The position numbers and the translations under genes were made by a program. DNA of 64,000 nucleotides, from the NCBI RefSeq assembly GCF_000315625.1, contig NW_005434655.1, forward strand, positions 618,807 through 682,806, given 5' to 3'. The stretch comes from Guillardia theta CCMP2712 (lineage: Eukaryota; Protista; Cryptophyta). The notes under the pieces are model-generated. The model was not told where the DNA came from, made no database searches, and saw only the letters and a program-made list of their open reading frames with translations. Positions 6,994 to 54,763 of the stretch are shown here, in pieces. Within the stretch, counting starts at the first letter, position 1. Each line of letters begins with the position of its first letter.

Positions 6994-7029
6994 TTTACTC
7001 AAAGTTTAGTTAAAAACAGCACGAATACA
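6994..7029 (-). repeat. Copy 1 (inverted) of a dispersed ~40-bp conserved intergenic element
   Basis: Reverse complement reads TGTATTCGTGCTGTTTTTAACTAAACTTTGAGTAAA, matching copies at 41236, 53393 and 54212. Confidence 0.75.
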
Positions 7030-9596
7030 TGACGGGCGGTCATAGGAGGGATGAGGTCTACCAGTGCAATGGTCAGTGGAGGGATGTGGGTCAGGATGTG
7101 GAGGGGGGATGAGGGTCTTGTTTAAAATGTTTTAAATTTTATAAAAGTATTGTAAAGGTCACCATCCAAATACGTGGGGGAATAGGTGATGACTACTACC
7201 CCTGGTACTCGGTACCCCATCTTTTGACAGGACACCTTACCAGAAAATACCCCACCACTGGTTTACTTGTTTTAAAATGAGTCACCTACACCCACCCCCT
7301 CTTTTCCAGACCATGACCACTGTTTACAACCCCTTCCTAGCAGCAATTACGAAGCCCCACCCCTTCTTAGGGCCCTTATGATGCCCCTCGCCTACGTAAC
7401 ATAATCAACTTTAACAAGGGGGTAGGGTCATCATATGACCCACTATCTTTCCTCGAGCACCCCCTCATTATACATACAAGTACCCCACCCTTATAGACTT
7501 TGCTGCACATTTACCCATTTTGTGATCTGTACCCCACCCTCTATCAAGGTGAAGTACCCACCGTGTATATTCTACCCCTGCTCGATCATCCGACCCTACC
7601 AATGGAACGATGGTCATACCCTATGCACCCCTTGCCGACAAGACTCTATCCGACTCTCAGCAAGTCTTGACACAGGGACTCATCCTCGTCCTCCCCCTCA
7701 CTCCTCCTCCTCAAATCGTCCTCGCCTCTCCTCCTCCTCCTTCTGCTGCTATCATTCGCTTTCCTCCTGTCATATCCCCGCGTTTCGCGGCCTACCACCC
7801 CTATCACCAGTCTGCCTGGTATAATCTGCATTGCGCAAATCAACGCATGTCTGCTTGCAAACTAGGTGGATGTATTAGCAGGATGGTGTATCCTCCGCCC
7901 CCTCATGCACCAGCCTTTCTCATAGCACGCTACCTCTCCTCCTCCTCGCCCTCCCCCTCCCTCCCTCTTCCCTGTTCGTTGAATTGGCATTTCATCGCCA
8001 ACAAATCAATTGCACTACCCCCCACCCCTCTACCTACCCCACCCCTACCTCCTCCTCCTCCGCGCCGCTCCCATGCGTGCTGCTGTGTTCAACTTTGCAG
8101 CCTATCACTTCAATCCAACTTTCCTTCCTATCCACTCCCTCCTCCCTCTCCCGCTCCTCCCGCTCCTCCTGCTCACGATCCCGCTCCTCCTCCTCCTCCT
8201 CCCCACCCGTCCTCTAGTCCCTCAAGTCAGGGTGGCGGCTGCGGTTTTAACGTGCCGCGGGCCCCGGCGGCTCCTTTTTGTCGCCGGCTCTATTTCCTTC
8301 TGCTGCGCGCTTATCGCGCCGACGGCGACTTTGCGAGTCAAGATCACCGCCTAGAGTGCGATGGTTGAAACTGGAATGCCGCCCCTCCTCCTTAGCCCTC
8401 CTGCCCCTCCTCCTCCTCCCTCTGTGTTTCTTGCTTGTCATGCGCCCCCGTGTACGAATGCTCTGCATGCATGGTAGCTGTTGATGAGTGCTGAGAGGGT
8501 AGGCGGCATGGAGCGGCAGCCATGTTCGACCGGCAACCTTTTGCTGTTGTCATGACTTTGAATACTGATTCTGGTCTTACTGCTCTCGCGCTCGCTGCCG
8601 ATTCTGCCATGCGCTTCTTCGTTTGTTCTTGCGATGCTGCCTCTCTGATGCATTATTGTTCTCCGCAAGTCAAAGACAGATCTCATGCCTCCTCCTTCCT
8701 CCTCCTCCTCCTCCTCCCCATGACCCCCCTCGCCCCTGCATCCCCCCCCCCCCACCACCACCTCCTCCTCCTCCTCCTCCTCCCTCGCTTCCATCTGCTG
8801 CTGCTGCTTCTTCTTCTGCTTCTGCTCCTTCATCCTCTTCCTCTTTTTTCTCTCCTCTACCTCACCTGCATTTCCCGATGCTCTTGGTTGTGTTCCGACA
8901 TCAGTTATTCGTATCTCTGTTCTTGCGTAGCTGGCAGGGCTCCTTCTCCTCGTGCTTGTTTTCGTTTGTGCGATGTTTGAAAAACATATCTTTCTTTCTC
9001 ACTGTTTCCTACTTTGTCGTGTCTTCCTCTTCTCGGAGGTCTACACCCTTTTGTCCCAACAACCAAGTCCACATCCATCCTTGCTGTATTCGCTGCTTTT
9101 ATGCTGTTTGATATTTGTAATCTTGACTTGGTTTGTAATCTCTTGGAATGTCTTGTTTTCTTGAGTTTTCTCATCGTACATTCATTGGTGCCATGGAGAT
9201 TTGGATTCATCAAAACCCTGTAAAACGCATGAATAGTTTTCAAAGCAGAAGCATTTTGACGGTGTTAGTTGATTGTTAGAAAGCAGCTTGAATGTGTCTG
9301 AGAGGTTTATGTAAAGCCCTTCTGTTCCTGACCCAACACTACAGTTCAATGACTTTGTCTCTGAAGCGGCAATATTGTCTCAAGATGACATGTGCTTGAT
9401 TTGATTCTGTTCGGAATGCTGTCTCTTTAGTAGAAATATTTCTTGGATTGTTTCAGACCAGACTCCAAAGTTCCTTCTTTTCCTGCCTCCTCCTTTGTCA
9501 ATCACAATCTTTACATGTTTATGGGAAGTTGGATCTTTTTGAAGCTAGTATTGGTTCTTTTCATCTCTGTCTCTTTGTAAGACTTGCTTTTTCCAG

Positions 9597-12500
9597 GCAG
9601 AGCAGAGTTCGAAAACACTTGTCCAGGTACTGCTTGCTTGTAAGTTGCGCAACCGTGAAGTTTGATCGCGTTTGACCACAGGTCCTATCAACAAAGGAGC
9701 TTTCGTGCTTCCGGCAAGCATTCATGCAGACACAACCAGAAAACGAGGACTCCAACACAGGTCCAGCCCAACGGATTTCTACCAAGGTCGAGAATGGAGT
9801 GAATGATACATGTGCTGTCGACTATGAGCTAGCATCGCTGCCTGACGCACCAACGTTTTTTCCTACAATGGAGGAATTCCGCGATCCGATGCGATACATC
9901 GAAAGCATCCGACTGCAGGCAGAGGAAGCTGGCCTTATCAAGATTATCCCTCCCAAGGAATGGAAGTGTCCGTTCACAATCAAGGAAAAGGGAGACTCCT
10001 TTCATTTCCAGACCTGCGTGCAATCCATTGATCAACTTCGCCATCGCCAAGGACCAAGCTCAAATTTCCTGAGGAAATTGAGACATTTTCACAAGAAGCG
10101 AGATCTGTCGGTACCTGCTGAGGTCGGAATGTCCCTCTTGCTTCCATCAGCTATGGCTTGATTGTTCTTTTTCGGCAGATTCCGTTCATCGACGGAAGGC
10201 AAGTGGACTTGCACTTGCTGTACAAGATAGTTGAGGAACGAGGTCCGCATCGCCTTTGCTTCCAACTTTGAACCGATTGACGGGATTCCCAGGGGGCATG
10301 ACAAAGGTGGACCAAGAGAAGAAATGGAACGATGTGGCAGCTTCTCTGAAAATAGGCAAGAACAGCCAGTCTGGGCCTGTAGCGCAGCGAATCAGGTTGG
10401 CGATTGTTGTCACTCCATCGCTACCTCGAGGTGACTGAAGTCTGCGCAGGGATGTTTATCGTCTGTATCTGGAGAAGTATGCGATGGCGATCTCGCAGGT
10501 TGGACGGCAGGATGTCTTGAGTCAGTGAAGAAGTCTGAAACAAGTGTGCAGGGACTGAAGCCTGAAGAAGAGCTCAAGGAGGAACCTCTCTTTACGGTCC
10601 GCAAGCGCTTCGCTCGCATGGCGGCTGCTGCAGGTCTCGATGGCTCAAGAGGACAAGTTGAAAGTTCCTGATGGCTCTTGTAGGAAACGCTGGAGAGGAG
10701 GGAGAAGAAGGAGATGCGGGCGATTCTTTTGGTTTCGGGGAAGGAGGCTTCTACACGTTCCATTCCTTCAGACGACGAGCGGATGACTTCAAGAGCAAGT
10801 GGTTCAGCGACTGGGAAAGGTGAGGAAAGAAGGTGGGGGAGAGACCTTGTGATGTGTCTTGATCAGGCCTGTCACCGTTGAGGACGTCGAGAAGGAGTAC
10901 TGGAGGGTGGTCGACGGTGGAGGTGCATCTCACTCAGTTCGATGAGCTTCCAATCTGATGCTTTTCTGATTTTTAGATTTGATGCTTCGCGTGGAGTATG
11001 GAAACGATCTTGACGTCTCTGGTCACGGAAGTGGCTTCCCTACAGCAACAAACTGCAAGCCGGAAGACAAAGTATGTCTCTTGTCTCTGTGTGCTGACGT
11101 GATGAGATGTGGTAAGTGTCCTTACCTTCTTACTTGCAGGAATATGTTGAATCGCCATGGAATCTCAACAACCTTCCGCTTCAGGTACTGATCCTGCAGC
11201 AGAAGTGTGTGAGAAGATGATGGTTGTCATAGGAAGCATCGCTCTTGAAATACATCTCGCCCAATGGCGAGATCAGCGGAGTCTCAGCGCCGTGGGTGTA
11301 CGTTGGGATGCTGTTTTCAACCTTTTGCTGGCACAACGAGGACAACTACCTCTACAGCATCAACTACATGCATCATGGAGCAGGCAAGACATGGTATGGC
11401 GTGCCTGGTGGTGAAGCAGAGAAGTTCGAGCAAGTATTTTACAACGAGGTCCCGGAACTCTTTGAGAAGGATCCAAAGCTCCTGTTCAAGCTTTGTACCA
11501 TGATTTCTCCGAAGGTGTTTCAGGAGAGAGGGGTGAGGGTGTACCACACGGTTCAGAGGCCTGGAGAGTTTATCGTGACGATGCCTCAGTCATATCACGG
11601 TGGGTTTTCTCATGGATTCAACTGCAACGAGGCCGTCAACTTTGCTCCAGCTGACTGGCTCCCGTTTGGTCGTGCGTCAGTGGAACGATATAAATGCAAA
11701 AAGAGGAGCCCTGTGTTCTCGCACGAACGATTGGTGATGACGTTGGCCCATCGCAACTTCTCTGACGCGATTCACGCTCGCGCCTCTGAGTGGATCGAGT
11801 CGGAGATGTTGTACATTGCTCGGAGGGAGTTGGAGGAGAGGAGGTTCCTTTGCCCCGGCGACTGCGACTCGTCGATCCCCGACTCCAAGAGGCCCAAGTG
11901 CTTCAGAATCCCCAGGGACATGAGCAATGTCGTCAACAGCAAGGACGAGTGGATCGGAGGAGTCTCTGAAGCTGAGATGCCTCAATGTCACTGCTGCCTC
12001 CACTACTTATACCTCTCGGGAGTGATGGACAGACGAAACCCGAAGAAGGTTTCGTGTCTGAGCAAGATGTGCCTGGCGAAGTTGCTGGGTGAGGAGTCGG
12101 ACTCACTGAACCTGGCGTCGCATGCAGAGCACTTGATCCTCGCCTACCGCTTCACGATGGAGGATCTCTTCTGTGTCTCCTCGTCGAGTGACGCCAACAT
12201 GATCTTGGAAGCGCGGAGGCTCGATCACTACTTTACGATGCTCAAGAACGATTCAGATGCCGCTGCTCTGACTGTCTGGTTCTTGCCTCACGGGGTAGAC
12301 GATGGGAAAGAATCTCCGCGATCCTCGATCGCCGAGATTGAGAACAGACCCAAGAACTCGCCCCTCGTCCACGGCAGCATGAAATCTGCACCTGTGAAGA
12401 ATCCTGCTATGGCTGGGATCAAGAGAGAGAACGGCGCTCCTGCTCCCGTGGTGAAGGATGCTCGTCCTGGCTCTCCTCTCCTCCTCACTTGCCATGCTCA

Positions 12501-13430
12501 GGTTCCCGGCAAGTTCTACTTCGGTTTCTGTGAGGAAGTCATCAATGTGCTGAAAAAGGTCCAACAGCAAGTGACCTCTCCCTGTCTCTGACCCTCCGCT
12601 GCAGCTCGCGGGGCAAGAGACGAAGCAGAACGGGGGGCGAGGTCTGTGCAAGATCGAGTGGGACGATGCAAGCGGGTTGCCAGTGCTTCCCATCCAGGTG
12701 TGTCTGCTCATGACACGGGGGAACAAAATCGTCACGAGCCCTGCAGGTGGGCCATGGTTGTGTCATAGAAACCCTGGGAGAGATTCAGGTGCTGAACCTC
12801 CGCCGCCTCCTCCTCTGCCTGAGTTTCTTTCTCGGCGCAGGCTCGTCCTAACTGGCAAGACCCGGAGGGCTTGTTCTACTGGCCCAAGGGATTTGGTCGA
12901 TCGGAATCCTCCAGCAGCTGCCCTGCTGACTTTGTTGTTCTTCAGTCTCGAAGAGGAACTTCCCGTCGATGAAGCAGGAGGGCAAGTGCTCGTNNNNNNN
13001 NNNNNNNNNNNNNNNNNNNNNNNNNNNNNNNNNNNNNNNNNNNNNNNNNNNNNNNNNNNNNNNNNNNNNNNNNNNNNNNNNNNNNNNNNNNNNTCTCCCT
13101 CTCCCTCTCACTCTCCTCTCCTCTCCCTCTCCCCTCTGCATCTCCCTCTCCCTCTCCCCTCTCCCCTCTCCCTCTCCCTCTACCTCTCCCTCTCCCTCTC
13201 CCTCTCCCTCTCCCTCTCCCTCTCCCTCTCCCTCTCCCTCTCCCTCTCCCTCTCCCTCTCCCTCTCCCTCTCCCTCTCCCTCTCCCGCCTGATCGCCTTT
13301 CTTCTTCTCTCTTTTCCTCCTGTTTCTCTTCTCCCGCTTCGATTCAGCGGGTTCTGACTGTGCTCACGGTGTTCAGGTTATGCAACGTGTGAACAATCTG
13401 CGAGCTGCGAAGAGGCCACGGACAGGATGA
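9597..13430 (+). CDS. KDM5/JARID1-type H3K4 histone demethylase: JmjN-ARID-JmjC-C5HC2 zinc finger plus C-terminal FYR module; multi-exon, contains an N gap
   Basis: Jmj[31 protein letters not shown]; [37 protein letters not shown]; Jmj[67 protein letters not shown] with Fe ligands HxE..H intact; CHCC..YLSG zinc finger; FYRN-like exons at 12677-12993. First in-ORF ATG is at 9724 and the true start may lie upstream. Confidence 0.9.
12994..13093. other. Assembly gap (N run), followed by a (CTCTCC)n microsatellite to about 13286
   Basis: Run of N seen directly; other gaps lie at 32985-33084, 35539-36237 and 37598-37697. Confidence 0.99.
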
Positions 13431-14285
13431 AGAAGAAGATCACACGCTGAACCATTTCTCTCCATTACATGTGACAGTAAATTCTCTTTGCCAGTGGATT
13501 TCTTCTCAAGAGTAGCTGAATAGCGATGGAGGAAAGGATTCCCCTCCCTCATCATTTGATATCCGTCCGATCGCTCCTCCTTGCACAACATGCTCCAAAG
13601 TCCTGCACCGCCTCTTCCTCTTCCTCTCGCGCCCCCTCGTGCCAGGACTTGCTTCCGCTACGGACATGCATCTCGACTGACGTCGGCTTGAGCAGACTGT
13701 AGGCATCAGCCTAACGACCGTACCTTCAAGGCGAGCTCAGTGCCAACGGCCCGGCCGGCATCAGGCGATGGCCCGCGCATGTCTACCCGCCGATGATACT
13801 CGGTCGGACGGGACACGCCAGACGAACACTGTCTTGTTCCACCAAGGCCCTCACAGTACTAAGTCCCTTTACTCACCAAAAAAGTTGCCAGGGGGCATTT
13901 TAAGTTCACTGAGTCAACTTATGGCACTGACCCGGGCCCGCGGGGCCAGCACTCAGCAGTGACTACCGTACCGTGGCACCCGCTAGGCAGCAGCCGGCTG
14001 GGCCCGGCGCCGCTGGGGCCAGCGCTGGGGCCGCCGGCAGGCGGCCGCCGGGCTGGGCCCCCGGCTGGGCCCCCGGGGCCTGCCGTGGGTTTGAGCGGGG
14101 AGTAGGCGTCGGGCAGGTCCATTCCGATTGGCAAGTCTACCGTTGCGATGGCCGGAGGGCAGAGAAGACGGAGGATGCGAACGAGCGGGAGCATGCGAGA
14201 GAGGAGGAGAGGGTTAGTGGCAGGGAGTGTGAAGTGAGAATCTGATGAAGACGCTCTGGTGACTGATCGACCTTGAAAGCTCACG

Positions 14286-17200: not shown

Positions 17201-17381
17201 AGAACTATTTCAGAGGAGGAGGAGAGAAGGTTGCTGCAAGTGGCGAAGGAGGTCACGGCCAAGAGCGCGTCCTGTGCTCAACATTTCTACACGCGGTGAA
17301 GGAGGATCTGGGAGCAGGGATGCCGCTGACGATTGCGAGGATGGCAGGTGCTTCAACTGGTTTGCTATGGAGAAGAAGTAA
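14286..17381 (+). CDS. Divergent kinesin-like protein (N-terminal motor domain, coiled-coil tail)
   Basis: VAVRLSP, YKFDSVFDE..NQRVFD, P-loop AYGQSGAGKSHTMG, LTFVDLLGCD and RDSRLLQLMSDWLTG. Introns at about 16575-16686, 16771-16816 and 17297-17339; stop TAA at 17379-17381. Confidence 0.85.
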
Positions 17382-17838
17382 ACCTACTTGTCTTGTTTGC
17401 GCCATTTGACGGATGCGATCAGGAAAAACTTTCAGAAGAAGTTCCAGGTCGATGGGAAGCAATCGAAGTGTTTCCTGTGACGGAGAGAAGAGAAGGGAGG
17501 AGGAGGAGAGAGCTGAGATGAGGAGGGAGAAGACGGGAGAGAGAGATCAGGGAGCAGGATGGGAGTTTGAGAGGGGACGTGTGGAGTTTGTATCTTTGTA
17601 GGGCTGTATTATTTCTCGTGATCTTCAAAAACGTTTCAAATCTAAATAAGCATAACAAAAACAACTTGAAATAGTCGAGCACCACGTCATCCTCAACCAT
17701 TCTTTCCTCTTGTCCTCTCTTACCCTTTCCCTCGCGCTCCGCTGTTGATTCAAATACCTCCCTCCATCATCTCCAACCCCCCCCTTCCCTCCTCCCTTCC
17801 CCACCGCCAACACTCGCTTCCCCCTTCTTGATCTCCTT

Positions 17839-21076: not shown

Positions 21077-21108
<32 letters not shown>

Positions 21109-40587: not shown

Positions 40588-41235
40588 GCTTCAATGTGTT
40601 TGCGGGAGCTAGAAGCAAGAGTGACAAGAAAGGGCTGCTGTCAGATGGTCGCAACTTGTCAAGCTTCTGTTGATTGGACCTTGCTCACACGTCCGTCGTT
40701 CACCTCCAGACTGTTATCCTTCAAACGCCATGGTGAACTTCACAGCTCCGTGCCGCAGAGTTCTGTCGTCACAACTCATCATCTCCACCCAATCTCAGCA
40801 GAACATGAGTGGTCTGACTTCTCTTGTCCTTGTCCTTGTCCTTGTCCTTGTCCTTGTCCTTGTCCTTGTCACGATACGATTCCGTCCATTCTTGGCTTTG
40901 ATGTTCACGTTGACTTTGGACCCTTTGAGGGGGGTGGTGGTGTCAGGTGGTAACGTCATATCAACATCATGGGTGGTTTCCCTAGGGGTACTTGGAGGGT
41001 AATGGAGGGGTACTGGAGTCATCATGACCGTTGTAAGATGGGGTACAAGGGGCAAACGACAGGAGGGTGGGGGTGGAGGGTGACGGGGTAGTTGTTTTTC
41101 TTTGTGACCCCAGGACTACCCGGTCATTGCCCAACCAAAAGGGGGGTAGTTGGTCACAACCTGGAAGTCAAAAAGCCAACTTAACTTTGTATGGACCTTA
41201 TAATTTACCTAAGTTTCACCGGACTGGACAGCTCC

Positions 41236-41280
41236 TGATTGTGCTCGTACTTTGTTTTACTTAACTTTGAGTAAAGAAGT
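41236..41280 (+). repeat. Copy 2 of the dispersed ~40-bp conserved intergenic element
   Basis: TGATTGTGCTCGTACTTTGTTTTACTTAACTTTGAGTAAAGAAGT. Confidence 0.8.
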
Positions 41281-41409
41281 ATCGAATTGTGGCTGGCGGA
41301 CTCAGTGAGTCGGATGAAACCCGGTGGCCGGGCCCGCCGCCGGGTTACAAGTGTAAAAGATAAAAAAAGAAACCTGACATGGCACCATCTTGTTTTGCGC
41401 GATGAGGAG

Positions 41410-42572
41410 ATGGCGTGCGTGGCGGGGGCGGGGGGGGGGGGAAGGGGGACGAGCTGGTTGTAGCTGAGATGAGAGAGCGACAATGCTGACATAGTCACTG
41501 CCTTCAACAATCCTGACATCACAACTTCCTTCAACATGGCATCACCAGCTGATGAAGATGGGTCCTGGACGTTGTTCACCCTGGATGTGAAATCGTTGCG
41601 TCAGAATGGTCCAAGTTGCGGCCTTGTAGCATTGCGGATGGCGTCTGTCTTTGTTTGCAGCAAGGAGACGGGAGGAGAGAATGTTCCCAGTGTCCAGGAT
41701 ATTCTGAAAGTTGCGACAGAAAAGGGTTTCAGCAGAAAAGGGGAGATTTTCTCCTGCCAACATCTTGCGGTGATTTGCGCATTGCATTACATTAAGGATC
41801 TCACGTTATCCAGGCATTGGGAAGAGAAGTCTGCAATGTATCAGCAGATGTCATCGAGGATCCTTCGACTGAATTGATTTGCTCCGCGATCTCCTATGGA
41901 AAACCAGTGCTGATCGCCTACGACGCTGACAAGGACAACTCTCCCTGCCTCCTGCAAGGTGGGTCCCTTGTCTCGAGGTCTCGCTAGTTGAACCAGAGGT
42001 CTCTTCACAGGTGCTCGAGCTCATTGGGCAGTAATCTGCGGGGTGGCGTTGCCCAGCACGGCTGGCCTCTCCGATCGGCTCGGGCCCCTCCTGGAGAAGG
42101 TGAAGGAAGTCGAGCAGGGTCGTACGAAGCTGGAGGTATTCGTGGTCTGATAGCTTCACTCAGCCCCTCATCTGCTTTTTCCCAGTGCTGCAAACAGTCG
42201 TCTCCTTTCACGGAGGAGGGTCGAGGAGTATGCTGCTGCTGCACCTGGTGCTCGGGTACGTCGCTGGGAACCCCAAGGGAGAAGGCAGACAACAGGGTCA
42301 TGGGGATATGTCTCCATGGAAAAGTGAGTACTCCCTGGGTAAGGAGAAGGAGGTATTGACCCTGAACTTTCCAGAGCTCCAGGCTGAACTTTTGGGACCT
42401 GGAGTCCCTGTTGGCGTCCAATGCAAACTTGGCGCAGCCGAGGTCTGACTTGAGCAGAGGTGAGGGTTCCACCAGGGTGTTTGTTTCGATTCTGATCTCA
42501 CTGGCAGTTGAGATGGTTGTTCCTGAGGGACTGGATGGCCTCAAATGCAAAATGATTGTGATCTCGATGTAA
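41410..42572 (+). CDS. ACTMAP: Actin maturation protease-like (C19orf54/UPF0692, C39-like cysteine peptidase), multi-exon
   Basis: RQNGPSCGLVALRMA (catalytic Cys), KGFSRKGEIFS, PVLIAYDADKDNSPCLLQG|ARAHWAVICG (catalytic His) and LHGKS, all in the order found in ACTMAP. Confidence 0.85.
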
Positions 42573-42659
42573 GTAGATTGACCTCAACCTGTTTGTTCCA
42601 AGGAAGTAGTATATTTGTATTTGTTTGAACGAAGTTTGGTAGAGATACAAGCCCATGCT

Positions 42660-45062: not shown

Positions 45063-45832
45063 AACAGTTGTCTGTGACAGTGTGGGCAAGGTCTTCACGG
45101 AAGAGGAGAGCGCGATGGAGGCATACTGGGCGGGAGGGTGAAGGGAAAACCAGGAGGGAGAAGGTGTGAGGTAGGTAGATAGGGAGGAGGAAACAGGAGA
45201 GGAATGAGCCGGGAAGACGAGGATAGGAAAGATGGGCATAATGCAAATAGCAAGTCTCTTGCCTTGAGAAACGACAAAACAGGTCAAGAGAAACTTTCGA
45301 AGTTGCCAAACACAACTATCCAACCAAACACAACTATCTAACCAAACCTCTTACTCAACGTCTGTTCTTCCGCATCCCTCTCCCTCTCCCTCCCCTCTCC
45401 CCTTCTCTCCCCTCTCCCCTTCCTCCCCACATCTCCGGAAGCATCGCCGGCATGTAACTAAACTTTCCCTGTCACATTCTGCACCCCGTGAAATTGTGAA
45501 ATCCCCCCGACTCATTTCGTTCCCGTTCCCAAGTCCCTCCCTCCCCCCTCCCTCCCTCCCTCCCCCGTTCCCCTTCTCCACCTTCGCGCTTCCTATCTTC
45601 CTCTCCTCGCTTCTTCTCCTCTCTCCTCCTGTCCTCCCCTCCCTCCCCTCCCTCCCTCCCTCCCTCCCTCCCCCTCTCAGATCTCCAGCTCCTCCCCCCT
45701 CCTTCTCCCTCCCTCCTTCTACCCCCCGGTTCCCTCCTCATTCTGCACCTCTAGACACGAGCAGATCTCTCCCTCCTCTCTCCCTCTCTCCCCTCACCTG
45801 CCACTTTAATTAGATGCTTCTGTCTCCTCCAC

Positions 45833-48800
45833 ATGTCCTCTCAGTGGAACTTTCGCACATGTTCGGTGCTGCTGCTGCTCCTCCTCCTTCTCGATCGCTC
45901 CATGAATCATGCCATCGAAGTGACCAACTTCATCGTCGAGCGATTCGATGCTCCGAACGAGTCGTTGTTGGTCCTGTCCTACAGCATTGAAAGTCGGCGG
46001 GCAGAACTTCCACGCTGTGGAGGCCTGAGACTTTCATTCCATGGCATTAGCAGCTTGTTGTTTGCGAACATGACGAGAGTCAGGTTGTTTGACAGTGAGA
46101 ATGCGATCTGCGATGACTGTGAGCTCGTCGTACCTCGAACAAGCTTGACGTGCGTCAAGTATGCAAGGCTGACCAGCCAGCACTGGAGGGAGCAGGTCAG
46201 GTATGTAGAGGCACACGTCATGCAGGGAGCAACAGCTGCCAGCATCGGCACGTCCCAGCTCATTGAGGGCGAATGGTGTGTGAGCAGCTCGCAGCCGTAT
46301 GCTTGCGCTCCTGACATCTTTCCCAGCATCCATGGCAGCATCGAGGAGCTGGCAGCAGCACGGCAGCAGCAGAGGCTCCTGACGTCCATGCACAAGGGAC
46401 GGGGGCAGGGGTGGGGGCGGGGGCAGGTGGAGCAGCAAACTTTCATGCTGTGGTGGCTACCCGTGGAGGATTATCTTGTGTTCCAACCTGACCGGTCGCG
46501 TGCTCGCCGTCTCACGTTGTTCTCTCCCCTCCAGCACAGCGTCCATGGCTCCTCCTCCTTGGAGTTGGCGTACCAGGTCGACGACCCACCTCCTCGCTTC
46601 CTCGTTCAAGTGCTGCTGCAAGACACGGAAGTCCTCTCCTCCCGTCAAGCATACCATGCAGAGACTCTCAAGGGCATCCCAGCAGGGGAGCACCTCCTCC
46701 GACTCCGCCTGATCGTGTTCGAGGCCCAGGAAGGGGCCGAGAGCACGGTCATCGACCTTGACGAAAGCTTGTACGAGGAGGTAACCGTCGATCTCAAGAT
46801 AATCTCAGGTTCCTTCTCCCCCCCTTCTCTCCTCTCCTCTTCCCCTCCACTTCCCTTCTCTTCTTTCCCCTCCTCTTCCTTTCTCTTCCCTCCCCTCAAC
46901 TTCTTTTCTCTTCCTCCCTCTCACCTTCTCTCCTCATGCTCTCCCTCTCCCTCCTCAGACTCTATCCGGTCTGCTCCCGTCTCCTTCAGCCACCCCAAGA
47001 TGGAGTTGACCTGCCACGGGCGCTTCTCTCGCTTCTGGAAGCACCAGTACGTCTCATCCTGCTCCTGCTCCTGCTCCTGCTCTCTCGTCAGATCGCTTAC
47101 TCCTCCACCTCCTCTCTAGCTGCAAGAACGTCGTGTTCTCCAGCACCAGCTCTCAGGCTTTGTTGAGGTTTCTTCCGCTCCGACAGGAGGCAGACGAAGA
47201 GGGTGAGGCAGCAATTGAACTTTCTTCATCCTCCGTTGTCCTCGTCCTCGTCTTCATACCTTTCTCCTCCTCCTCCTGCTGCTCCTCCTCCTGCTGCTCC
47301 TCCTCCTGCTCCTCCTGCTCCTCCTCCTGCTCCTGCTCCTCCTCCTCCTAAGTCAGTGACAAACCTGTTCGCAGTCTGCTTCCTTATCTCCTACATCTTC
47401 CTGCGGGAGCTGCAGGATCAGGACGCAGCCCCGCTGCTCCGGCTGGAGGAGCTGAAGGAGGAGGGAAGAGGAGGAAGTCTTGCCTTGTCCAGCGGGGAGG
47501 TATCCAGAGGGTGTGTGCTGGTTCCGCCGCTCGAGAGCTCCAGCGATCGTCTTCTGCATGCTACTCTGCTCGACGCGCAAGGGGAGCCAGTGGAAGGAAG
47601 CACCTTCATCCTCCACTTGTCCTATCCCGAGGCCCTAAGGAGGTCCGGAGGCAACCTGTCTGCTCCTGCTTCTCCTTCTCCCACTGCTGCTGGTCCTCCT
47701 CCTCCTCCTCCTCCTCCTCCTCCTCCTCCTCCCTCTCCCCCCGACGCATCCCAAGGAAGCTCCAAGACCGCCTGGGTCACGTTGGCTGCTACCGACAGCT
47801 ACGCCGTTGGCGCCCTGCTCGCCCTGCGCTCCATCCGGTGACAACCCGCGCAATTGTCAACCTCCTGAACCTCAGCTGAATGGCAGCTGGGCCTGTCGCG
47901 GTCGTGCTTCAAGAGACTTTGTCATCCTGGCGTCGAGAGAGGCGAGTCAGCACGCGCAGTTACGCCCACCTGACGTCGAGCTTGAGACCAGCTGCTTTGG
48001 AAGCAGCAGCTGGAGGAGGAGGCGAGAGTCGAGGGCTTCCTCATCCGTTGGGTCGACCCGATCAGGTCGAAACTCCCCCAGCTCGATAGCCGCAACGAGC
48101 TGGAACTGGTGAGCTGGGCCCAAGCTGGGGTGTGCGAGTGACTCGGGGCAGGGATACTCGAAGCTCCACCTGTGGCAGCTCGTCGAGTACCAGCGGGTCT
48201 TCTACGTGGATGCTGACAGCCTGGTGAGCTGCGGGCCAGCTGACTGCCCAGCTGTTGACCTGAAGGCTCTTCCCAGCTCTTCAGCTGCCCAGACGAGCTC
48301 TTCGACGGCTCTCAAGGCTTTCTTGCTGGCTCCTCCCCCTCCGCTCCGCCCGACGGTGACCTGCGACTCTCTTGCCCTCGCTGCTCTGCTCACCCGCCAG
48401 CTGCAGTCCAATTCAATGACCATCTAGGAAGGAAAGTTCTCCGTCACTCTGCCGCAACTCTGGCCATCGCCACCTGCATCATGATCCTGACGCCCTCCCT
48501 CGCCACCCATCAGCTCCTCCAACTCTACGCCGAGTCAGCGCAATCCTTCGATGTGACGTCTCCCGCATCTCCTCCATTTAGTCCTCCCCCCCCCCCACTC
48601 CTCCTCCTCCTCCTTCTCCTCCTTCTCCTTCTTCTTCTTCTCCTTCTCCTTCTCCTTCTCCTCCTTCTCCTTCTTCTTCTTCTCCTTCTCCTTCTCCTTC
48701 TCCTCCTTCTCCTTCTTCTCCTTCTCCTTCTCCTTCTCCTCCTTCTTCTCTTCCTCCTGAAAATCTGTTTCTCGTTCTGTCCTTAACTTTCGTGACTCTG

Positions 48801-49694
48801 CTTCCTGCGCTGACCGCGCAAGCACAGGGTTCGGATCGCGGGCTGTTGCTCCCTTTCGTCGATTCCTTCCTACCACCCACCGTTGTAGCGTGGAAGAGGA
48901 CGGTACATTCTATTCTATGTTCACCGCACTCCTCTGCCTCCTCCTGTATACTTCCCTCCTCCCACTCTCTACTTCTTCCTCCCTCTCTACTTCCCTTGTT
49001 TCTTTCTCCTTCCTGTTCCTAGTCTCCTAGTCCTGCATGATCGCTGACGTCTCTTGCTCAGGCCGGTCTCTTCAAGCACATCTGGTCCGATCCTCATCTC
49101 CCAATTATGGGAGTCGATTACAGTGGCGTGCCGAAGCCATGGCAGGAAGGGAATGACAAGAGAAGGAGGAGGAGGAGGAGGAGGAGTTGCGCTGGGGGGT
49201 GCGGGGGTGCGAGGTGGTAGAGAAGAGGAGTAGGAGAACGGAATAGGTGGAGGGTGTGGCGGAAGAGGAGGAAGGGAGGGGGTAGGACTGAGTTTGCCCC
49301 AGGTGGTCTTCGCCATTTGATCCGATCGACAAGCAGAACTACTGGCCCATCCTGCTTGAGTGGTGGGAGGAATACTGGTGAGAGGAGCCGAGAAAAGGGA
49401 AGGGAGAGTGAGGGGAACGGAGGAAGGTCACTTGGAGCAAGGGCCATAGAGAGGAGGAAGGGGATGAGGTTGATTCGAGAGCAGGAGCTACAAGGGAGTC
49501 TTTCCCCATGAAACGCCGACAAAATGGGCAGCGACGAAGAGCATGTATCAGGTGATGACAACAAGCAGTAAAGTCGCACAACACTGTAGCTTCCGGTGAC
49601 ACTTTCGACTTTCAGGAGGCCACCACTGGAGCGCAGGAGGAGGAGCAGAGATAAGACCAGGACAGGCCCCGACTCCCTCAGAGAGGACACGTGA
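45833..49694 (+). CDS. Secretory-pathway glycosyltransferase family 8 (glycogenin-like catalytic domain) with a long N-terminal extension; multi-exon
   Basis: N-terminal hydrophobic signal (VLLLLLLLL); AWVTLAATDSYAVGALLALRSIR; YSKLHLWQLVEYQRVFYVDADSL (DxD); SFD|GSDRGLL; DYSGVPKPW. Confidence 0.8.
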
Positions 49695-49785
49695 AACAGA
49701 TAAAATATTTTGACTGTTCTCGACCAGGAGGAAGGGTCATATCCCACTGAAGATACTTTCCTCGTCCCCTCTCTCGTCCTCCCTC

Positions 49786-52580
49786 CTATCTCACGTTGCT
49801 GTTCTCCTTCACTCGCTCCGCAACCTACACCAATCATCAGCAAGACCCCAGCAGAGGGCACGATAGAGGCATTACAATCGGATGCCCTCCAGCCAAGACC
49901 GGCATCGACTTCTTGTAGGTCACCTGCAGCCCAGCTCCGACCTGCCACCTCATCATTATCATCCCAGCAAGAACCCCAGCAGGGATCTCACCTTAAGCTC
50001 GAGCTTCTGGAACACCTTCAGCTCCATGTTCTCGGCCACCACTGTGTCCGCCCCCTTGGCCTCAAGCTTCGTCCCAGGGGCGACGGAAGTGTCAGCAACC
50101 TGCAGGAGCCCCTGGACTTTGGTGGGCTTCTGCTGGTCACCCACAAGCACCATCCCCTCGCTCTTGATCCCCTTGAACTCCGCAGGCTTCAGGTTCATCA
50201 GCACGACGACGCTTCTGCTCTGCAGCTCGCTGACTTCATACTTCCCCTTGAGGCCAGCACAGACCGTCTTGACTCCCAGCTCGTCTCCAAGAAACACTTT
50301 GAGGACGTACAGGTTCTCTGCCTCTGGATGGTCCTCCACGCTATCGATCCTGCCCACACGCATGTCGCAAGGGAAGATCTCTTTCTGCTCGGTGACTGTC
50401 TTCTCAATCTTCGCATAGAGAACATCTCCCACATGGGTAGTGGTTCCAGGTTTCAGATTGTTGAAACTAGGATCGAGCTTGGGAATGCTGACCGGATTGG
50501 TTCCCAGCTTGCAGAACATCTCTAAGGAGCCGTTGGGAAGCAGAGGCTGCAGAAAGTGAGCGAGAATGTACATGGCCTCCAGCACCGATCGACAGACGAC
50601 CATCCTCTTGTGTTGCGCTTGCTCCTCTGTCACCCCGTTGGCCGGGTCGGCCTTGATGTGCCAAGGAGCCAACTCAGTAAGATACTTGTTGGTATCCTTG
50701 ACCGCTGTCAAGACAATCATGGCAGCATCCTGCAGTTGAAAGGCCTCGTAAGCTGCACATGATTCGGCGCACAGTCGGAGGAAGTCAAAGCAAGGTTCAG
50801 CTGTGACATCCGGAACCTTACCACCGCAGTACTTCTGAGTAATGTTGGTCGCTCTGTGCATCAGATTTCCAAGTGAATCGGCAAGTTCTGCATTGTGCAT
50901 AGTGGACAGACCCTCCTCTGCAAAGGGGATGTCCTGACCAAAGGGAGAGGCGTAGGCAAGGTAGAAGCGGAAAGAGTCCGAAGAGAATTTGTCTAATTGC
51001 TCATGAGGGTCAATAACATTGCCCAAGCTCTTTGACATCTTCTTGCCCTCCTTATCATTGATGAAGCCGTGAGCATACACACACTTTGGAAGGGGCATCT
51101 CGCAAGAGAATAGCATACATGGCCAGATTACACAATGGAACCAAATGATATCTTTGCCAATCAAATGAATGTTGGCGGGCCAAAAGTCACGATTTGGGCC
51201 ATCGGGCCAGTCACACCCGGTGACATAGTTGGAGAGGGCGTCAAACCAAACGTACATGACATGCTTCTTGTCTGATTTCAACGCAGGGTGCTCAGGCACA
51301 GGGATACCCCAATCAAAGTTTGTTCTAGAGACGCTGAGGTCCCTCAGGGGCTCACGCAGCTTCGCCAGGATTTCATTGCGTCTGAAGACGGGCTGAATGA
51401 AGTCTGCATTCTTCTCGATGTACGCAAGGAGGCGATCTTGATATTTAGACATGCGGAAGAAGTACGATTCTTCCGTGCGCTTTTCGAGTGGCTTTCCAGA
51501 TGAGGGATCCTTGTAATCGCTTGCTTGGGCTTCCGTTTCAGTTACGAATGTTTCTTCCCTCACATTATACCATCCTTCATAGGTATCGAGATATATATCC
51601 CCAGCATCTGCAGCCTTCAAGAACAAAAGCTGTGCAAGTTTCTTATGCTTATCCATGGTGGTTCGGATGTAGAAATCATTTGAAATTCCGAGCCTCTTAT
51701 TCAGCTCTTGGAATGCATTGGCATACTTGTCACAGATGTCAATCGGTTTCACACCAAGGTTCTCCGCAGTGTCTGCAATCTTCTGTCCGTGTTCGTCAGT
51801 TCCAGTGAGGTAGAACACTTTCCGTCCATACGCGCGATGCCACCTAGCGATGATGTCGGAGGTCACCGCCTCGTAGGCATGACCCATGTGTGGGTTTCCG
51901 TTGGTATAGTTGATGGCCGTAGTAATGTAGAATCTCTCCTCACTTGCATCCTTCGGTTTTGAAGGAGGAAGCAACGTGCGAGCAGATCGGCACCTCAGTC
52001 GTACAAGCGCGTCCTTGCAGCATTGAACCCCCGACATCATGTTGAACCACTCCTCCACTGCTGGATACTTTGACTTGTCTGCGTCGCTCAGAACACCACC
52101 AGCACCATAACCAGGGTAGAGCGCAGCCCATATGGCTACGTCAGCAAGAGATAGACTGCTGAGCAGGGGCTTCGGAGCACCCGCTGTACAAACCTTCTCC
52201 ATCTTTTCCAAAAATTTGGCAGCCTCTGACTGATGCGCAGAAGTGTCTGCGGCACCGAACGCGATGTCTGTGAACCATCCCAGTGCCGACTTGTCAAGGG
52301 CTGTTTCAGCCTGTTCCAACCACTCCTCGACCAGTTTCCCTTCACTCGCGTGATCGGGCCCAATCACCGTTTCCTTGTCGGACGCCACAGACAGGATGTA
52401 TCGGCAGATTGCGTTCGAGCCAAAGACCTCCACCGTTCCAGCACTGTAAAGAGGATAGCCTTTCAACTGCGTGCTCAACGGGACTTTATCAAAGACGACG
52501 TCTTCCTTGGTCGCCTGCACTATTGCCGCACATTTGAGAGTGTGGATGTCGTGAGCTCTGAACCTGATAGGAAAGGACAC
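49786..52580 (-). CDS. MARS: Methionyl-tRNA synthetase with N-terminal GST-like and C-terminal EMAPII/Trbp111 tRNA-binding domains; 5' exon unresolved
   Basis: FYITTAINYTNGNPHMGH (HIGH), GTDEHGQKI, YVWFDALSNY, IGKDIIWFH, KMSKS; anticodon domain LADSLGNL; OB-fold DMRVGRI..HPEAENLYVLKV..NLKPAEFKGIKSEGMVL. Two short 3' introns lead to ..GGHPI|VAERVKENSNVR*. Confidence 0.97.
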
Positions 52581-53239
52581 GTCAGAGAGATCGACCGATC
52601 ATGTGAGGTCAGGACGATGAATGTTGATTGTTTGCATGATAGTCAAATCAGAGATGCTCTAAATCCTACGATCCTTCAACCCTTCTTTCGATCCGTTGCT
52701 TCCTTAAAACAACCCGAACCAAATTTCTAGTCACTCATTCCTCTTGCCGTCATCCTGTACTTTGCCAGTGCAATGCTCTATAGAACCATTAGATTCTCGC
52801 CCTCCTGCTCTGCATCGCAACGACGTTCCCTGCATTTCGCTTACCTGATGCTTCCTTTGCTTGTTGCCATCGCTCGCCACGCGTCTGATCGAAAGCGACC
52901 CTCGCCCACCCCACCCCTCCATTTCCCGATAACTACCCTTCTTTGGGTAGGCACAAATCCCTACCAATCATATACCACCCTACCTGGCAAACAATTTTGA
53001 CCCCACCTACTCTGAAAATACGGAAATTATTACCAAATCAAGGGGTATTTTTATTGGGATAGTATGAACATTTGACAAGCGGGGTGGGTACTTTAATAAC
53101 TCAATTTCTATTCATTAGCCCCCCTTCCCTACTGATCGTTGTACTGATATCTCTTACATGTTTTTTTATTTTGTATTATTATAAATGTATATATATTTGT
53201 TAGTACCATGAACTCAGTACAATTATTGTTCTATTCCTG

Positions 53240-53900
53240 CCACTCAGTAGTTATGAGCCTGACTCAGTCGGATCGCCGTTTGGCGGCGCCGCGGGCCCCG
53301 GCGCGGCCCGGCCGGCTCACAGTCACACTTTACTCAAAGTCAGTCAGTCGCAGTGACTCAGGCCGCACTCGGAGTCACACTGGCTGACTCAGTGATTGTC
53401 CTCGTACTGATCTTTAACTTAACTTTGAGTAAAAGTAGGCTGCCATTCGGCCGCCCGGCCGGAATCATGGCATCCGTGATGGCCGCGCAGTCGCGGCCAG
53501 TCGGATCGGGCAGTGACTCTGACGGATCAGACTCTGTCAACGGGTTCGCCGGGTCGCCCCCGCGCGGCCGCGGCCCGGCCGCGGGGCAACAGTGAAACGC
53601 CGGGTTCCGTGTTCGGTTCCGGGGCCCGGCGACAGGCTCAGTGGCCCAGGCCGCCGGAGCCAGGCCCGGTCAGTGTACCGGGCCCGGGCCGGTGGCAGGC
53701 TCGGCCCGGCACTGAACGGTGATAGGACCGCCGGACGCGGTGCGGCTGCCGGCCGGTCTGGGCCGGCCAGGGACTCCGGGAGCCGCGGGCCCGGGCCGTG
53801 CGGCCCGGCCCCCGGTGCGGCCGCCCACAGCCCGCCCGGCCGCCGCGCTCGCCGCAGTGGGCGGCCGCGGGGCCGCGTGGCGCGGCCGGCCACCGAATAT
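53240..53900. promoter_or_regulatory. GC-rich quasi-palindromic intergenic block with clustered TGACTCA motifs upstream of MetRS
   Basis: TGACTCA at 53260, 53354 and 53385; dense GGCCCGG/CCGGGCC/GCGGCC words; same style as blocks at about 13730-14110, 27680-27760, 30600-31030, 41290-41345 and 58430-58800. A regulatory role is inferred from position only. Confidence 0.45.
53393..53436 (+). repeat. Copy 3 of the dispersed ~40-bp element, with an inverted 12-bp half-site at 53329-53340
   Basis: TGATTGTCCTCGTACTGATCTTTAACTTAACTTTGAGTAAAAGT; TTTACTCAAAGT (53329-53340) is the exact reverse complement of ACTTTGAGTAAA (53422-53433). Confidence 0.85.
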
Positions 53901-54211
53901 CCGTAGCCTGATCCAAGCGACGATTCCGATCCAGGCAGGATGAAAAATCAGGGCATCACTGCCGTTCTGTGATCAGTCCCAGATGGCAGTTATTACTACT
54001 AGGCTTCACTGACGCCGACTTACGTCTAGATCTGTGGTGAAACGCAGCTTGAATCTATGCAGTCTGTTGCCGGAACTTCCGAGAAGGTATATAATTTTCA
54101 ATCTCAATTGTACTAAGTTGGAATTATTTTCTGTGAAATTGAACTGTCATAGTATAGAGACGTGAAAATGTATCTGAATGGAACCCCTGATTCACTGATA
54201 CCCTTCTGTTT

Positions 54212-54243
54212 CTGATCTTTAACTTAACTTTGAGTAAAGAAGT
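54212..54243 (+). repeat. Copy 4 (5'-truncated) of the dispersed element, with an inverted half-site at 54306-54315
   Basis: CTGATCTTTAACTTAACTTTGAGTAAAGAAGT, identical to copy 3 over 27 bp; TTTACTCAAA lies downstream. Confidence 0.8.
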
Positions 54244-54763
54244 TAGCTAGCTTCTGTTTCGTTGTGTGGAGGCCGGAGGCTGTAAGGCCCGCCTACTCGA
54301 AGGAGTTTACTCAAATATACTCGAAATAATTTCAAGCAGATCGAATCTTGAAGGGCAAGTAAAAATTGTTTCCGAAATCTCTGGATGAATCATGAATAAT
54401 CTCTACTCCAAATTGAACATGACTTAAACTGAATACGAAATCGTTTTGAAATCCTTGATTGCGGAGGGATGCACCGATGATTCCTCGTGACCGGCTGGTA
54501 GAAATTGAAAGCACCTCTTTTCAGTTATCAAAAAGGAGTACTTCCCCCAGAACAGGTTATCAGCGATCAAAGAGGGCATAAAACCAGGATGGTGGGGTAC
54601 TTTTCCGCAGAATATCACGGGTACCTTATTGCGGAGTTCCGGTCCGTGACAGCTTTGCATGTGACCATGTGACGAGAAAAGGTTTCGGACCCTTTATTAC
54701 CCTCCTGTCCTCTCCTTGAGCCAGCTGTTCTCGAGTCACACGTAAGCGCCAAGACCCAGTATA

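What the first reader, a model, noticed from the sequence alone, without database searches (positions are those of the whole stretch)
6994..54315. Dispersed ~40-bp conserved non-coding element (…CTCGTACTGATCTTTAACTTAACTTTGAGTAAA), four copies in 64 kb
Seen: copies at 6994-7029 (inverted), 41236-41280, 53393-53436 and 54212-54243, all outside recognised CDS and flanked by unrelated sequence. The 3' core AACTTTGAGTAAA is invariant. Inverted half-sites lie at 53329-53340 and 54306-54315, and looser cores at about 4068-4083, 13867-13874 and 58977-58988. Copies 1 and 2 sit 130-180 bp upstream of a gene start and point towards it. Inference: it is too long and complex for a chance match or a single transcription-factor site. 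It could be a high-copy cis-element marking promoters or boundaries, the terminus of a non-autonomous mobile element, or a small RNA-derived relic. I know of no named element with this sequence.
Basis: partly seen in the sequence, partly recalled or inferred. Interest (0 to 1): 0.75.

Follow-up and report, generated by a model that had tools for sequence, protein, structure and literature searches.

The report
Truncated LINE retrotransposon tails
The repeated ~40-base motif is the last stretch of a 4.35-kb jumping gene (an R2-like LINE retrotransposon) of the alga Guillardia theta; it has left about 2,000 mostly very short, truncated copies across the genome, so it is ordinary transposon debris rather than a promoter signal or an RNA gene.

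Summary
The core AACTTTGAGTAAA occurs exactly four times in the window (chance 0.02). Two further termini of 10-12 nt lie at the "inverted half-sites". The terminal 16-mer occurs 2,050 times in the 87-Mb genome against 3 for the control.

The motif is the 3' end of a ~4.35-kb non-LTR retrotransposon. The reference copy is L103:5617-9968. It has one 1,348-aa ORF with a reverse transcriptase. Its C-terminal zinc-knuckle/nuclease domain folds like R2 retrotransposon proteins. No APE endonuclease was found.

- All copies share the exact 3' end and are cut off at the 5' side at every length from 10 nt to full length.
- Counts by distance from the 3' end are 2,050, 562, 373, 31 and 11.
- Direct repeats of 7-12 bp flank even 21-33-nt copies. 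This is the signature of target-primed reverse transcription.

Rejected readings:
- MITE: inverted pairs are no commoner than other arrangements, and the duplications flank single arms.
- Spliced leader: the G. theta leader is a different sequence.
- Oriented promoter element: ORF starts are not enriched downstream.

An earlier scan note on other DNA of this genome also inferred a retrotransposon tail. Novelty is low: a new member of a known kind. Minor oddities are extreme truncation, clustering of insertions, and a YADN catalytic motif.

The parts
6994..7026 (-). 5'-truncated LINE copy: last ~21-32 nt of the element, diverged, with one indel
   Evidence: Exact 13-mer core. BLAST to the reference element gives 6994-7014, 95% over 21 nt, ending at the last base of the element. 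The extension to about 7026 is by eye. No clear target-site duplication.
41232..41275 (+). 5'-truncated LINE copy: last 45 nt of the element, 89% identical
   Evidence: It ends exactly at the element's last base. Only a weak 6-nt flank repeat (CGGACT) was seen by eye.
53329..53340 (-). 12-nt LINE terminus (ACTTTGAGTAAA): an extremely truncated copy, head-to-head with the next copy
   Evidence: Exact terminal 12-mers: 5 in the window against 0.008 expected.
53393..53433 (+). 5'-truncated LINE copy: last 41 nt, 100% identical to the reference copy
54213..54238 (+). 5'-truncated LINE copy: last 26-27 nt, 100% identical
54239..54250 (+). 12-nt extra tail (gaagttagctag) between the LINE terminus and the second copy of the target-site duplication
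   Evidence: Tails of 0-12 nt are seen in other copies too.
54203..54212 (+). Target-site duplication, first copy (CTTCTGTTTC)
   Evidence: It is a 10-nt exact direct repeat with 54251-54260.
54251..54260 (+). Target-site duplication, second copy (CTTCTGTTTC)
   Evidence: read directly.
54306..54315 (-). 10-nt LINE terminus (TTTGAGTAAA): an extremely truncated copy facing the 54213-54238 copy tail to tail
   Evidence: Six exact terminal 10-mers in the window against 0.12 expected.
3378..3390 (+). Possible diverged short copy (AACTTTGAGAAAA, one mismatch)
   Evidence: The 13-mer with up to one mismatch is expected 0.02 times by chance. Not examined further.

Best explanation
The element is the 3' terminus of a recently active non-LTR (LINE) retrotransposon family of Guillardia theta. 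The family is about 4.35 kb long. It has one ORF of 1,348 aa that encodes a reverse transcriptase followed by a CCHC zinc knuckle and a restriction-like (PD-(D/E)XK) endonuclease, which is the R2-type architecture. There is no APE endonuclease.

Shown here:
- Every copy ends at the same base (...CTTAACTTTGAGTAAA).
- Copies are truncated from the 5' side at every length, from 10 nt to full length.
- Many copies, including ones of only 21-33 nt, are flanked by 7-12-bp direct repeats of target DNA.

Inferred from what is established about LINEs: the endonuclease nicks the target, with a weak preference for ...ACT|GA.... The freed 3'-OH primes reverse transcription from the 3' end of the element's RNA (target-primed reverse transcription). 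Synthesis usually aborts within a few dozen nucleotides. The second-strand break, about 10 bp away, produces the duplication.

The invariant 13-nt core is therefore simply the first piece copied in every insertion event. The sharp outer edge is the insertion junction. The fading inner edge is the truncation point. The four window copies are inert insertion footprints of 21-45 nt.
For: Copy number:
- The terminal 16-mer with up to one mismatch occurs 2,050 times in the 87.1-Mb genome, against 3 for the reversed control.

Parent element:
- A 311-nt 3' query matched many loci at 95-100% identity over its whole length.
- Copies share the 3' end and extend upstream by 238, 270, 297 ... 1,390, 1,718 and more than 1,799 nt.
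- Three copies reach about 4.35 kb at 98.5-99.8% identity.
- ORF L103:5757-9803 is 1,348 aa, and it is intact in 2 of 6 long copies.
- Pfam RVT_1 matches at E 6e-8. The best PDB sequence match is the R2Bm reverse transcriptase.
- For the C-terminal 274 aa, the AF2 model has pLDDT 69.9 and pTM 0.69. Its top five Foldseek hits are R2 retrotransposon proteins (probability 0.90-1.00, E from 4.7e-4), followed by PD-(D/E)XK nucleases.
- No APE was found in the N-terminal 581-590 aa.

The window copies:
- They align to the last 21-45 nt of the reference, and each ends at its final base.

Truncation curve (16-mers with up to one mismatch):
- 2,050 at the terminus, 562 at 32-48 nt in, 373 at 100-116 nt, 31 at about 1 kb, and 11 in the 5' UTR.

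Target-site duplications:
- Exact flank repeats of at least 7 nt occur in 29 of 112 copies, against 5.2 in shuffled pairings. For at least 8 nt the counts are 21 against about 1.8.
- Examples include copies of 21, 26, 29 and 33 nt and the window copy at 54213-54238.

Short copies are truly short:
- Upstream flanks of 77 short copies share no family-level similarity.

Organism:
- Guillardia theta CCMP2712.
Against: - Only about a quarter of copies show a clean duplication of 7 nt or more. The rest have short, imperfect or no duplications, which is compatible with R2-like integration but was not demonstrated.
- Some junctions carry unexplained extra tails of 1-12 nt, or more.
- Insertions cluster about eightfold more than a uniform model predicts. 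The simple mechanism does not explain this.
- The RT motif C reads YADN rather than YADD. That would normally raise doubt about activity, although near-identical copies argue the family was recently active.
- The clade assignment rests on a medium-confidence structure model and weak sequence matches, not on a phylogeny with reference LINEs.
- The 16-mer counts could understate longer copies if internal sequence diverges faster than the terminus.
Confidence: 0.93

Rival explanations
1. It is a MITE or another terminal-inverted-repeat DNA transposon family. The motif would be the TIR, and the 105-215-bp units with TTTACTCAAAG... on the left and ...CTTTGAGTAAA on the right (for example window 53329-53433) would be complete elements.
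For: Some loci look like TIR elements of 105-215 bp. L020 has two ~50-nt inverted arms within 112 bp. A TA duplication inside a TTTAAA target could be read into the termini.
Against: - Only 18 of 92 termini have an inverted partner upstream within 450 bp, and 21 of 92 have one downstream, which is the wrong arrangement for a TIR element.
- Among close neighbour pairs the orientation is random: 5 heads facing, 6 tails facing, 6 same strand.
- No duplication flanks the pairs. Duplications of 8-12 bp flank single arms instead. In L057 one arm has its own 11-bp duplication.
- The arms are different lengths of one sequence that continues into a 4.35-kb RT-encoding element.
Confidence: 0.02
2. It is a cis-regulatory element (a promoter, TSS or boundary mark) kept by selection near gene 5' ends and pointing towards the gene. 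It might have been exapted from a mobile element.
For: - All copies lie in non-coding DNA. ORF-start frequency on both sides is below the window background.
- The 53393-53433 copy sits about 35 bp before an ATG.
- Copies cluster in short regions, and their flanks are enriched 5-7-fold in GTGACT/ACTCAG words that could be promoter motifs.
- Earlier scan notes describe several dispersed intergenic elements near 5' ends in this genome (unchecked).
Against: - There is no directional relation to ATG-initiated ORFs: 25 of 89 downstream against 32 of 89 on the opposite side.
- Copy length varies continuously from 10 nt upward with a fixed outer edge. That is what truncation predicts, not what a binding site predicts.
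- Copies of 100% identity next to unrelated flanks, with target duplications, indicate recent insertion rather than conservation.
- Absence from coding DNA is what purifying selection against insertions would produce anyway.
Confidence: 0.03
3. It is a spliced-leader exon or a retroposed relic of a spliced leader or small RNA. The ...TTTGA|GTAAAG junction would act as a splice donor.
For: The pattern of a fixed 3' edge with 5' truncation resembles the retroposed spliced-leader relics of dinoflagellates. GTAAAG resembles a 5' splice site. G. theta does perform SL trans-splicing (PMC5619915).
Against: - The G. theta spliced leader is the 17-nt CTCGGCGGCTGGTCAAG, encoded about 20 times. It is unrelated to this motif.
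- The sequence downstream of the motif is not conserved and there is no Sm site.
- There are no Rfam or tRNA hits.
- The motif continues upstream into a LINE 3' UTR and ORF.
Confidence: 0.01

Closest known systems
R2 and the other LINEs with a restriction-like endonuclease (the R2, R4, NeSL, CRE and Hero clades)
   Same: - A single ORF with the RT in the middle, followed by a C-terminal CCHC zinc knuckle and a PD-(D/E)XK-type nuclease.
- No APE domain.
- Fold-level match of the C-terminal 274 aa to the R2Tg, R2Pm and R2Bm proteins, and the best PDB sequence match of the RT is R2Bm.
- No poly(A) tail, a precise 3' end, 5' truncation, and small variable target duplications.
   Different: - It is not site-specific. 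More than 2,000 dispersed insertion sites have unrelated duplications and only a weak ...ACT|GA... preference. R2 and R4 insert in 28S rDNA, and CRE and NeSL insert in spliced-leader genes.
- No N-terminal zinc-finger or Myb motif was detected.
- RT motif C is YADN, not YADD.
- Sequence identity to R2 is very low (11-13% in the structural alignment).
- Its placement among the RLE clades was not tested by phylogeny.
Dualen/RandI-type dual-endonuclease LINEs, which earlier scan notes report at G. theta telomeres
   Same: A LINE of the same genome with a C-terminal restriction-like endonuclease. Truncated copies are common.
   Different: No APE domain was found in this ORF. Insertions are dispersed in unique DNA rather than in TTTAGGG arrays. 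The relation between the two families was not tested.
5'-truncated 'dead-on-arrival' copies of L1 and other LINEs
   Same: A fixed 3' end, variable 5' truncation and flanking target-site duplications. Most copies are inert fragments.
   Different: Truncation is far more extreme. About 73% of the copies that keep the terminal 16-mer do not reach 48 nt, and copies of 10-33 nt are common. There is no poly(A) tail.
MITEs (for example Stowaway or Tourist)
   Same: Short, high-copy and located in non-coding DNA near genes. Some loci mimic inverted-repeat units.
   Different: There is no consistent TIR pairing, the duplications flank single arms, and the sequence is the tail of an RT-encoding element.

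Membership tests
Non-LTR (LINE) retrotransposon integrating by target-primed reverse transcription | Encodes a reverse transcriptase of the non-LTR type | tested here: met
   Pfam RVT_1 at E 6e-8 (33.1 bits against a cutoff of 29.6) at aa 592-735. The best PDB sequence hit is the R2Bm RT. 724 relatives at E<=1e-3, and most of the scanned ones carry RVT_1.
Non-LTR (LINE) retrotransposon integrating by target-primed reverse transcription | Copies share a fixed 3' end and are truncated to variable extents at the 5' end | tested here: met
   Extents run from 10 nt to 4.35 kb with a common last base. Counts fall 2,050, 562, 373, 31, 11 with distance from the 3' end.
Non-LTR (LINE) retrotransposon integrating by target-primed reverse transcription | Target-site duplications of variable length flank individual insertions | tested here: met
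   Exact flank repeats of at least 7 nt in 29 of 112 copies against 5.2 in shuffled pairings, with lengths of 7-12 nt. About three quarters of copies lack a clean duplication.
Non-LTR (LINE) retrotransposon integrating by target-primed reverse transcription | No LTRs or terminal inverted repeats on full-length copies | tested here: met
   The 5' end (TGGCTTTTTGAAATGG...) and the 3' end (...CTTTGAGTAAA) of L103 and L104 are unrelated.
RLE-bearing LINEs (R2 supergroup: R2, R4, NeSL, CRE, Hero) | CCHC zinc knuckle and PD-(D/E)XK restriction-like endonuclease C-terminal to the RT | tested here: met
   The motifs C-D-x-C...H...C, GD(F/I)x(L/I)P, LxD(F/V)(S/T) and K(I)RxHR are conserved among relatives. 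The AF2 model (pLDDT 69.9) has R2 proteins as its top five Foldseek hits (probability 0.90-1.00), followed by PD-(D/E)XK nucleases. Confidence is medium. Catalytic residues were not assigned rigorously.
RLE-bearing LINEs (R2 supergroup: R2, R4, NeSL, CRE, Hero) | Absence of an N-terminal APE endonuclease | tested here: met
   No Exo_endo_phos hit at E<=5 in aa 1-581. No APE-like PDB hit in aa 1-590.
R2 sensu stricto (also R4, CRE, NeSL) | Site-specific insertion into a repeated host gene (28S rDNA or a spliced-leader gene) | tested here: not met
   There are 2,050 dispersed termini with unrelated flanks and duplications. The DNA between the window copies is single-copy. The window has no rRNA, tRNA or SL hit.
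R2 sensu stricto (also R4, CRE, NeSL) | Placement within the clade in an RT phylogeny with reference elements | not tested
   No reference LINE sequences (Repbase or Dfam) were available through the tools.
MITE / TIR DNA transposon | Two terminal inverted repeats bounding each element, with a duplication flanking the pair | tested here: not met
   Only 18 of 92 termini have an upstream inverted partner, against 21 of 92 in the opposite arrangement. Pair orientation is random. No duplication flanks the pairs, and duplications flank single arms.
Spliced leader / SL RNA gene of G. theta | Identity with the 17-nt leader CTCGGCGGCTGGTCAAG followed by GT and an Sm site | tested here: not met
   The published leader (PMC5619915) is unrelated to the motif. 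The downstream sequence is not conserved.
Core-promoter / TSS element | Fixed orientation and distance relative to downstream gene starts | tested here: not met
   ATG-ORF starts within 300 nt: 25 of 89 downstream against 32 of 89 on the other side, with a background of 0.56. This is a crude proxy. No TSS annotation or RNA-seq data were available.

The most novel reading that the evidence does not exclude
The parent element may represent an undescribed, non-site-specific branch of the R2-like (restriction-like endonuclease) LINEs. Its reverse transcriptase would use a (Y/F)ADN catalytic motif in place of YADD. Its integration would abort so early that it seeds the genome with thousands of 10-45-nt footprints, concentrated about eightfold in short intergenic hot spots rich in GTGACT-type motifs. 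Some of those footprints might since have been taken up as regulatory or splice-signal sequence.
Probability: 0.15. Interest if true: 0.45.

Novelty: new member of a known kind. Interest (0 to 1): 0.25.

Why it matters
This mainly clears up an apparent mystery. The high-copy 'unknown cis-element' of the Guillardia theta genome is LINE debris. It should be masked before motif discovery, promoter analysis or gene prediction. Several annotated 'hypothetical proteins' (for example GUITHDRAFT_110080) are pieces of this element's ORF.

There is secondary interest for transposon biology. An R2-like LINE that inserts all over a genome, rather than at one site, with near-identical intact copies, is a possible natural comparison for the site-specific R2 enzymes. 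Its very early abortion of reverse transcription and its YADN motif would also be worth studying.

Tried and rejected
- **Spliced-leader idea.** GA|GTAAAG looked like a splice donor. Rejected after reading PMC5619915, where the leader is a different sequence.
- **MITE/TIR idea, including a TA duplication in TTTAAA.** Rejected on pair statistics and on where the duplications lie.
- **Introner-like reading.** CTTAAC could be a branch point and TTTGAG an acceptor. It was considered only by eye and dropped once the LINE was found. Not tested against gene models.
- **tRNA or Pol III gene targeting, as in Dictyostelium TRE elements.** There are no tRNA or Rfam hits in the window.
- **TE-island explanation of the clustering.** The 778 bp between the two window pairs is single-copy.
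- **A second LINE/SINE family sharing only the tail.** The upstream flanks of 77 short copies share no family-level similarity.
- **Structured 3' UTR.** The fold z-score is -1.32, which is not significant.
- **Double-TPRT origin of head-to-head pairs.** No duplication flanks the pairs I examined. Left open.
- **Literature.** Searches for the motif letters and for G. theta non-LTR elements found nothing relevant.
- The 5' junctions of the other roughly 8 full-length copies were therefore not examined.
Full report
**1. Observation**

The 13-mer AACTTTGAGTAAA is exact at 6994 (-), 41263 (+), 53421 (+) and 54226 (+). One-mismatch hits lie at 3378 (+) and 53329 (-). The chance expectation is 0.02 matches.

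The two 'inverted half-sites' are exact 12-nt and 10-nt matches to the end of the motif. The window holds six exact terminal 10-mers against 0.12 expected and none for the reversed control. The looser cores near 4068, 13867 and 58977 are not distinguishable from chance.

The four assembly gaps lie at least 3.5 kb from any confirmed copy, so they do not affect the finding.

**2. Genome-wide picture**

The window is G000:C19:618807-682806 of an 87.1-Mb, 669-contig assembly. The terminal 16-mer CTTAACTTTGAGTAAA, with up to one mismatch, occurs 2,050 times on both strands. The reversed control occurs 3 times.

Protein matches identify the organism as Guillardia theta CCMP2712.

I aligned 34 copies and then 98. 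They show a knife-sharp outer edge after GAGTAAA, where only +1 G (64%) and +2 A (48%) are biased. Conservation decays gradually inward. The length of the match to the consensus runs continuously from 12 to more than 52 nt.

**3. The parent element**

A subset of copies shared 150-245 nt upstream of the motif. A 311-nt query from one of them matched dozens of loci at 95-100% identity across its whole length, with 1,292 first-look candidates.

With 1.5-kb flanks, the copies all end at the same base. Upstream they stop at 238, 270, 297, 314, 338 ... 1,390, 1,718, 1,780 and more than 1,799 nt. Ten-kb fetches showed copies of 1.87, 3.0, 3.65 and about 4.35 kb at 98.5-99.8% identity.

The reference copy is L103:5617-9968. 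Its features are:
- One ORF, 5757-9803, of 1,348 aa. It is intact in L103 and L106.
- A Pfam RVT_1 domain at aa 592-735.
- The Bombyx R2 reverse transcriptase as best PDB sequence match.

The C-terminal 274 aa contain a CCHC knuckle and conserved GD...LxD(F/V)(S/T)...K motifs. An AlphaFold model built on 17 relatives has pLDDT 69.9 and pTM 0.69. Its top five Foldseek matches are R2 retrotransposon proteins (probability 0.90-1.00), followed by PD-(D/E)XK nucleases such as bunyaviral cap-snatching endonucleases and MspJI.

The N-terminal 581-590 aa show no APE endonuclease by Pfam or by PDB sequence search.

The element is therefore an R2-type LINE, meaning one with a restriction-like endonuclease. 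Its nearest relatives are other G. theta 'hypothetical proteins' and unnamed metagenomic ORFs.

**4. The short copies are real insertions**

The window copies align to the last 21, 45, 41 and 27 nt of the reference, and each ends at its last base.

Counts of 16-mers (up to one mismatch) placed at increasing distance from the 3' end fall as follows:

| Position in the element | Count |
|---|---|
| Terminal 16-mer | 2,050 |
| 32-48 nt from the 3' end | 562 |
| 100-116 nt from the 3' end | 373 |
| About 1 kb from the 3' end | 31 |
| 5' UTR | 11 |

Exact direct repeats between the 5' junction and the DNA just past the terminus are strongly enriched. Repeats of at least 7 nt occur in 29 of 112 copies against 5.2 in shuffled pairings. 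Repeats of at least 8 nt occur in 21 against about 1.8.

These repeats flank copies of 608, 342, 160 and 136 nt, and also copies of 33, 29, 26 and 21 nt. Window copy 54213-54238 has the 10-nt duplication CTTCTGTTTC at 54203-54212 and 54251-54260, with a 12-nt extra tail in between.

The upstream flanks of 77 short copies share no family-level similarity. They are therefore not long copies of another family with the same tail.

A fixed 3' end, 5' truncation and variable duplications of 7-12 bp are the classic products of target-primed reverse transcription.

Reconstructed empty sites show only a weak ...ACT|GA... preference at the first nick. Unlike R2, this element is not site-specific.

**5. 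Mechanism**

Three things are shown: the anatomy of the element, the truncation series and the duplications.

The rest is inferred from established LINE biology. The nuclease nicks the target. The 3'-OH primes cDNA synthesis at the RNA's 3' end. Synthesis usually aborts, very often within the first 20-50 nt. The second nick, about 10 bp away, yields the duplication.

- The invariant core is the first stretch copied in every event.
- The sharp edge is the junction.
- The unrelated flanks are the target DNA.
- The variable length is the truncation.

**6. Rival readings**

- **MITE.** Inverted partners are no commoner in the TIR-like arrangement (18 of 92) than in the opposite one (21 of 92). Close neighbours have random relative orientation. 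Duplications flank single arms.
- **Spliced leader.** The G. theta leader is CTCGGCGGCTGGTCAAG (PMC5619915). Rfam and ARAGORN found nothing in the window.
- **Oriented promoter element.** ATG-initiated ORFs start within 300 nt in 25 of 89 cases downstream and 32 of 89 on the other side. Both are below the window background of 0.56. This proxy is crude because no annotation was available.

**7. What remains unexplained**

- **Clustering.** Insertions cluster: 17 of 92 neighbour gaps are under 1 kb against 2.1 expected (P about 5e-11). The 778 bp between the two window pairs is single-copy, so TE islands are not the explanation.
- **Flank motifs.** Flanks are enriched 5-7-fold in GTGACT/AGTGAC/ACTCAG words within about 40 nt of the junctions, but at no fixed offset. 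This could reflect a target or chromatin preference, or simply the composition of intergenic DNA.
- **Extra tails.** Some junctions carry tails. Two full-length copies share AGTTTTTT after the terminus.
- **Catalytic motif.** RT motif C is YADN in all five long copies that cover it, and (Y/F)ADN in 40 relatives.
- **3' UTR.** It has no significant predicted structure (z = -1.32).

**8. Comparison, novelty and verdict**

The element works like the RLE-type LINEs and meets their architectural criteria. It fails the site-specificity that defines R2, R4, CRE and NeSL. Its exact clade was not tested, because no reference LINE library was available.

No paper in the searchable library describes it.

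I could not confirm that it is the same sequence. My result agrees with it and supplies the parent element. Two other notes describe Dualen-type telomeric LINEs in this genome. This ORF lacks their APE domain.

The verdict is ordinary transposon debris: a new member of a known kind, of low interest, with a few oddities worth a transposon specialist's look.

Noticed in passing
L103:5757-9803 (aa ~690, PAYADN); also L101, L102, L104, L106: The reverse transcriptase motif C reads YADN instead of the usual YADD in all five long copies that cover it. 40 of the retrieved relatives carry YADN or FADN. The asparagine therefore looks like a clade trait rather than a lesion in one copy.
   Followed up: partly
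G000 contigs C1-C4 (places listed); window 53329-54315: The LINE insertions cluster strongly. 17 of 92 neighbour gaps are under 1 kb against 2.1 expected, and relative orientation is random. In the window, two pairs of termini bracket a single-copy 778-bp stretch (53434-54211).
   Followed up: partly
window 53340-53400 and 41296-41312; flanks of many loci (for example L011, L013, L027, L028): Short GTGACT / AGTGAC / ACTCAG words (as in cagtgactcag and gactcagtga) are 5-7-fold enriched within about 40 nt of the insertion junctions. They share no longer consensus. They may be an intergenic or promoter motif of G. theta, or part of the endonuclease's preferred target.
   Followed up: partly
L018:1210-2000 (G000:C2 around 123629-123835); L008:1501-1691: In L018 the two facing LINE termini sit inside a larger palindrome. 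The flanks on both sides are reverse complements of each other for nearly 290 bp at 87-100% identity. This is an inverted duplication that includes the insertions.
   Followed up: no
L103:9969-9977 and the oriented copy L104 just past its terminus: Two full-length copies carry the same extra AGTTTTTT after GAGTAAA. In L104 it is followed by A7 and then a 5-nt GCCAG duplication. This suggests read-through of a shared source locus or untemplated tails.
   Followed up: no
P0002 = GUITHDRAFT_110080; also GUITHDRAFT_100273, _103214, _105260 and _110103: Several annotated 'hypothetical proteins' of G. theta are fragments of this LINE's ORF or of sister LINE families. One gene model joins LINE sequence to an NXPE4_C-like segment. 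These are probably TE-derived or chimeric models.
   Followed up: no
window 41420-41450: A long G-rich tract (ggcgggggcggggggggggggaaggggga) lies about 150 bp downstream of the 41232-41275 copy. Its nature was not examined.
   Followed up: no
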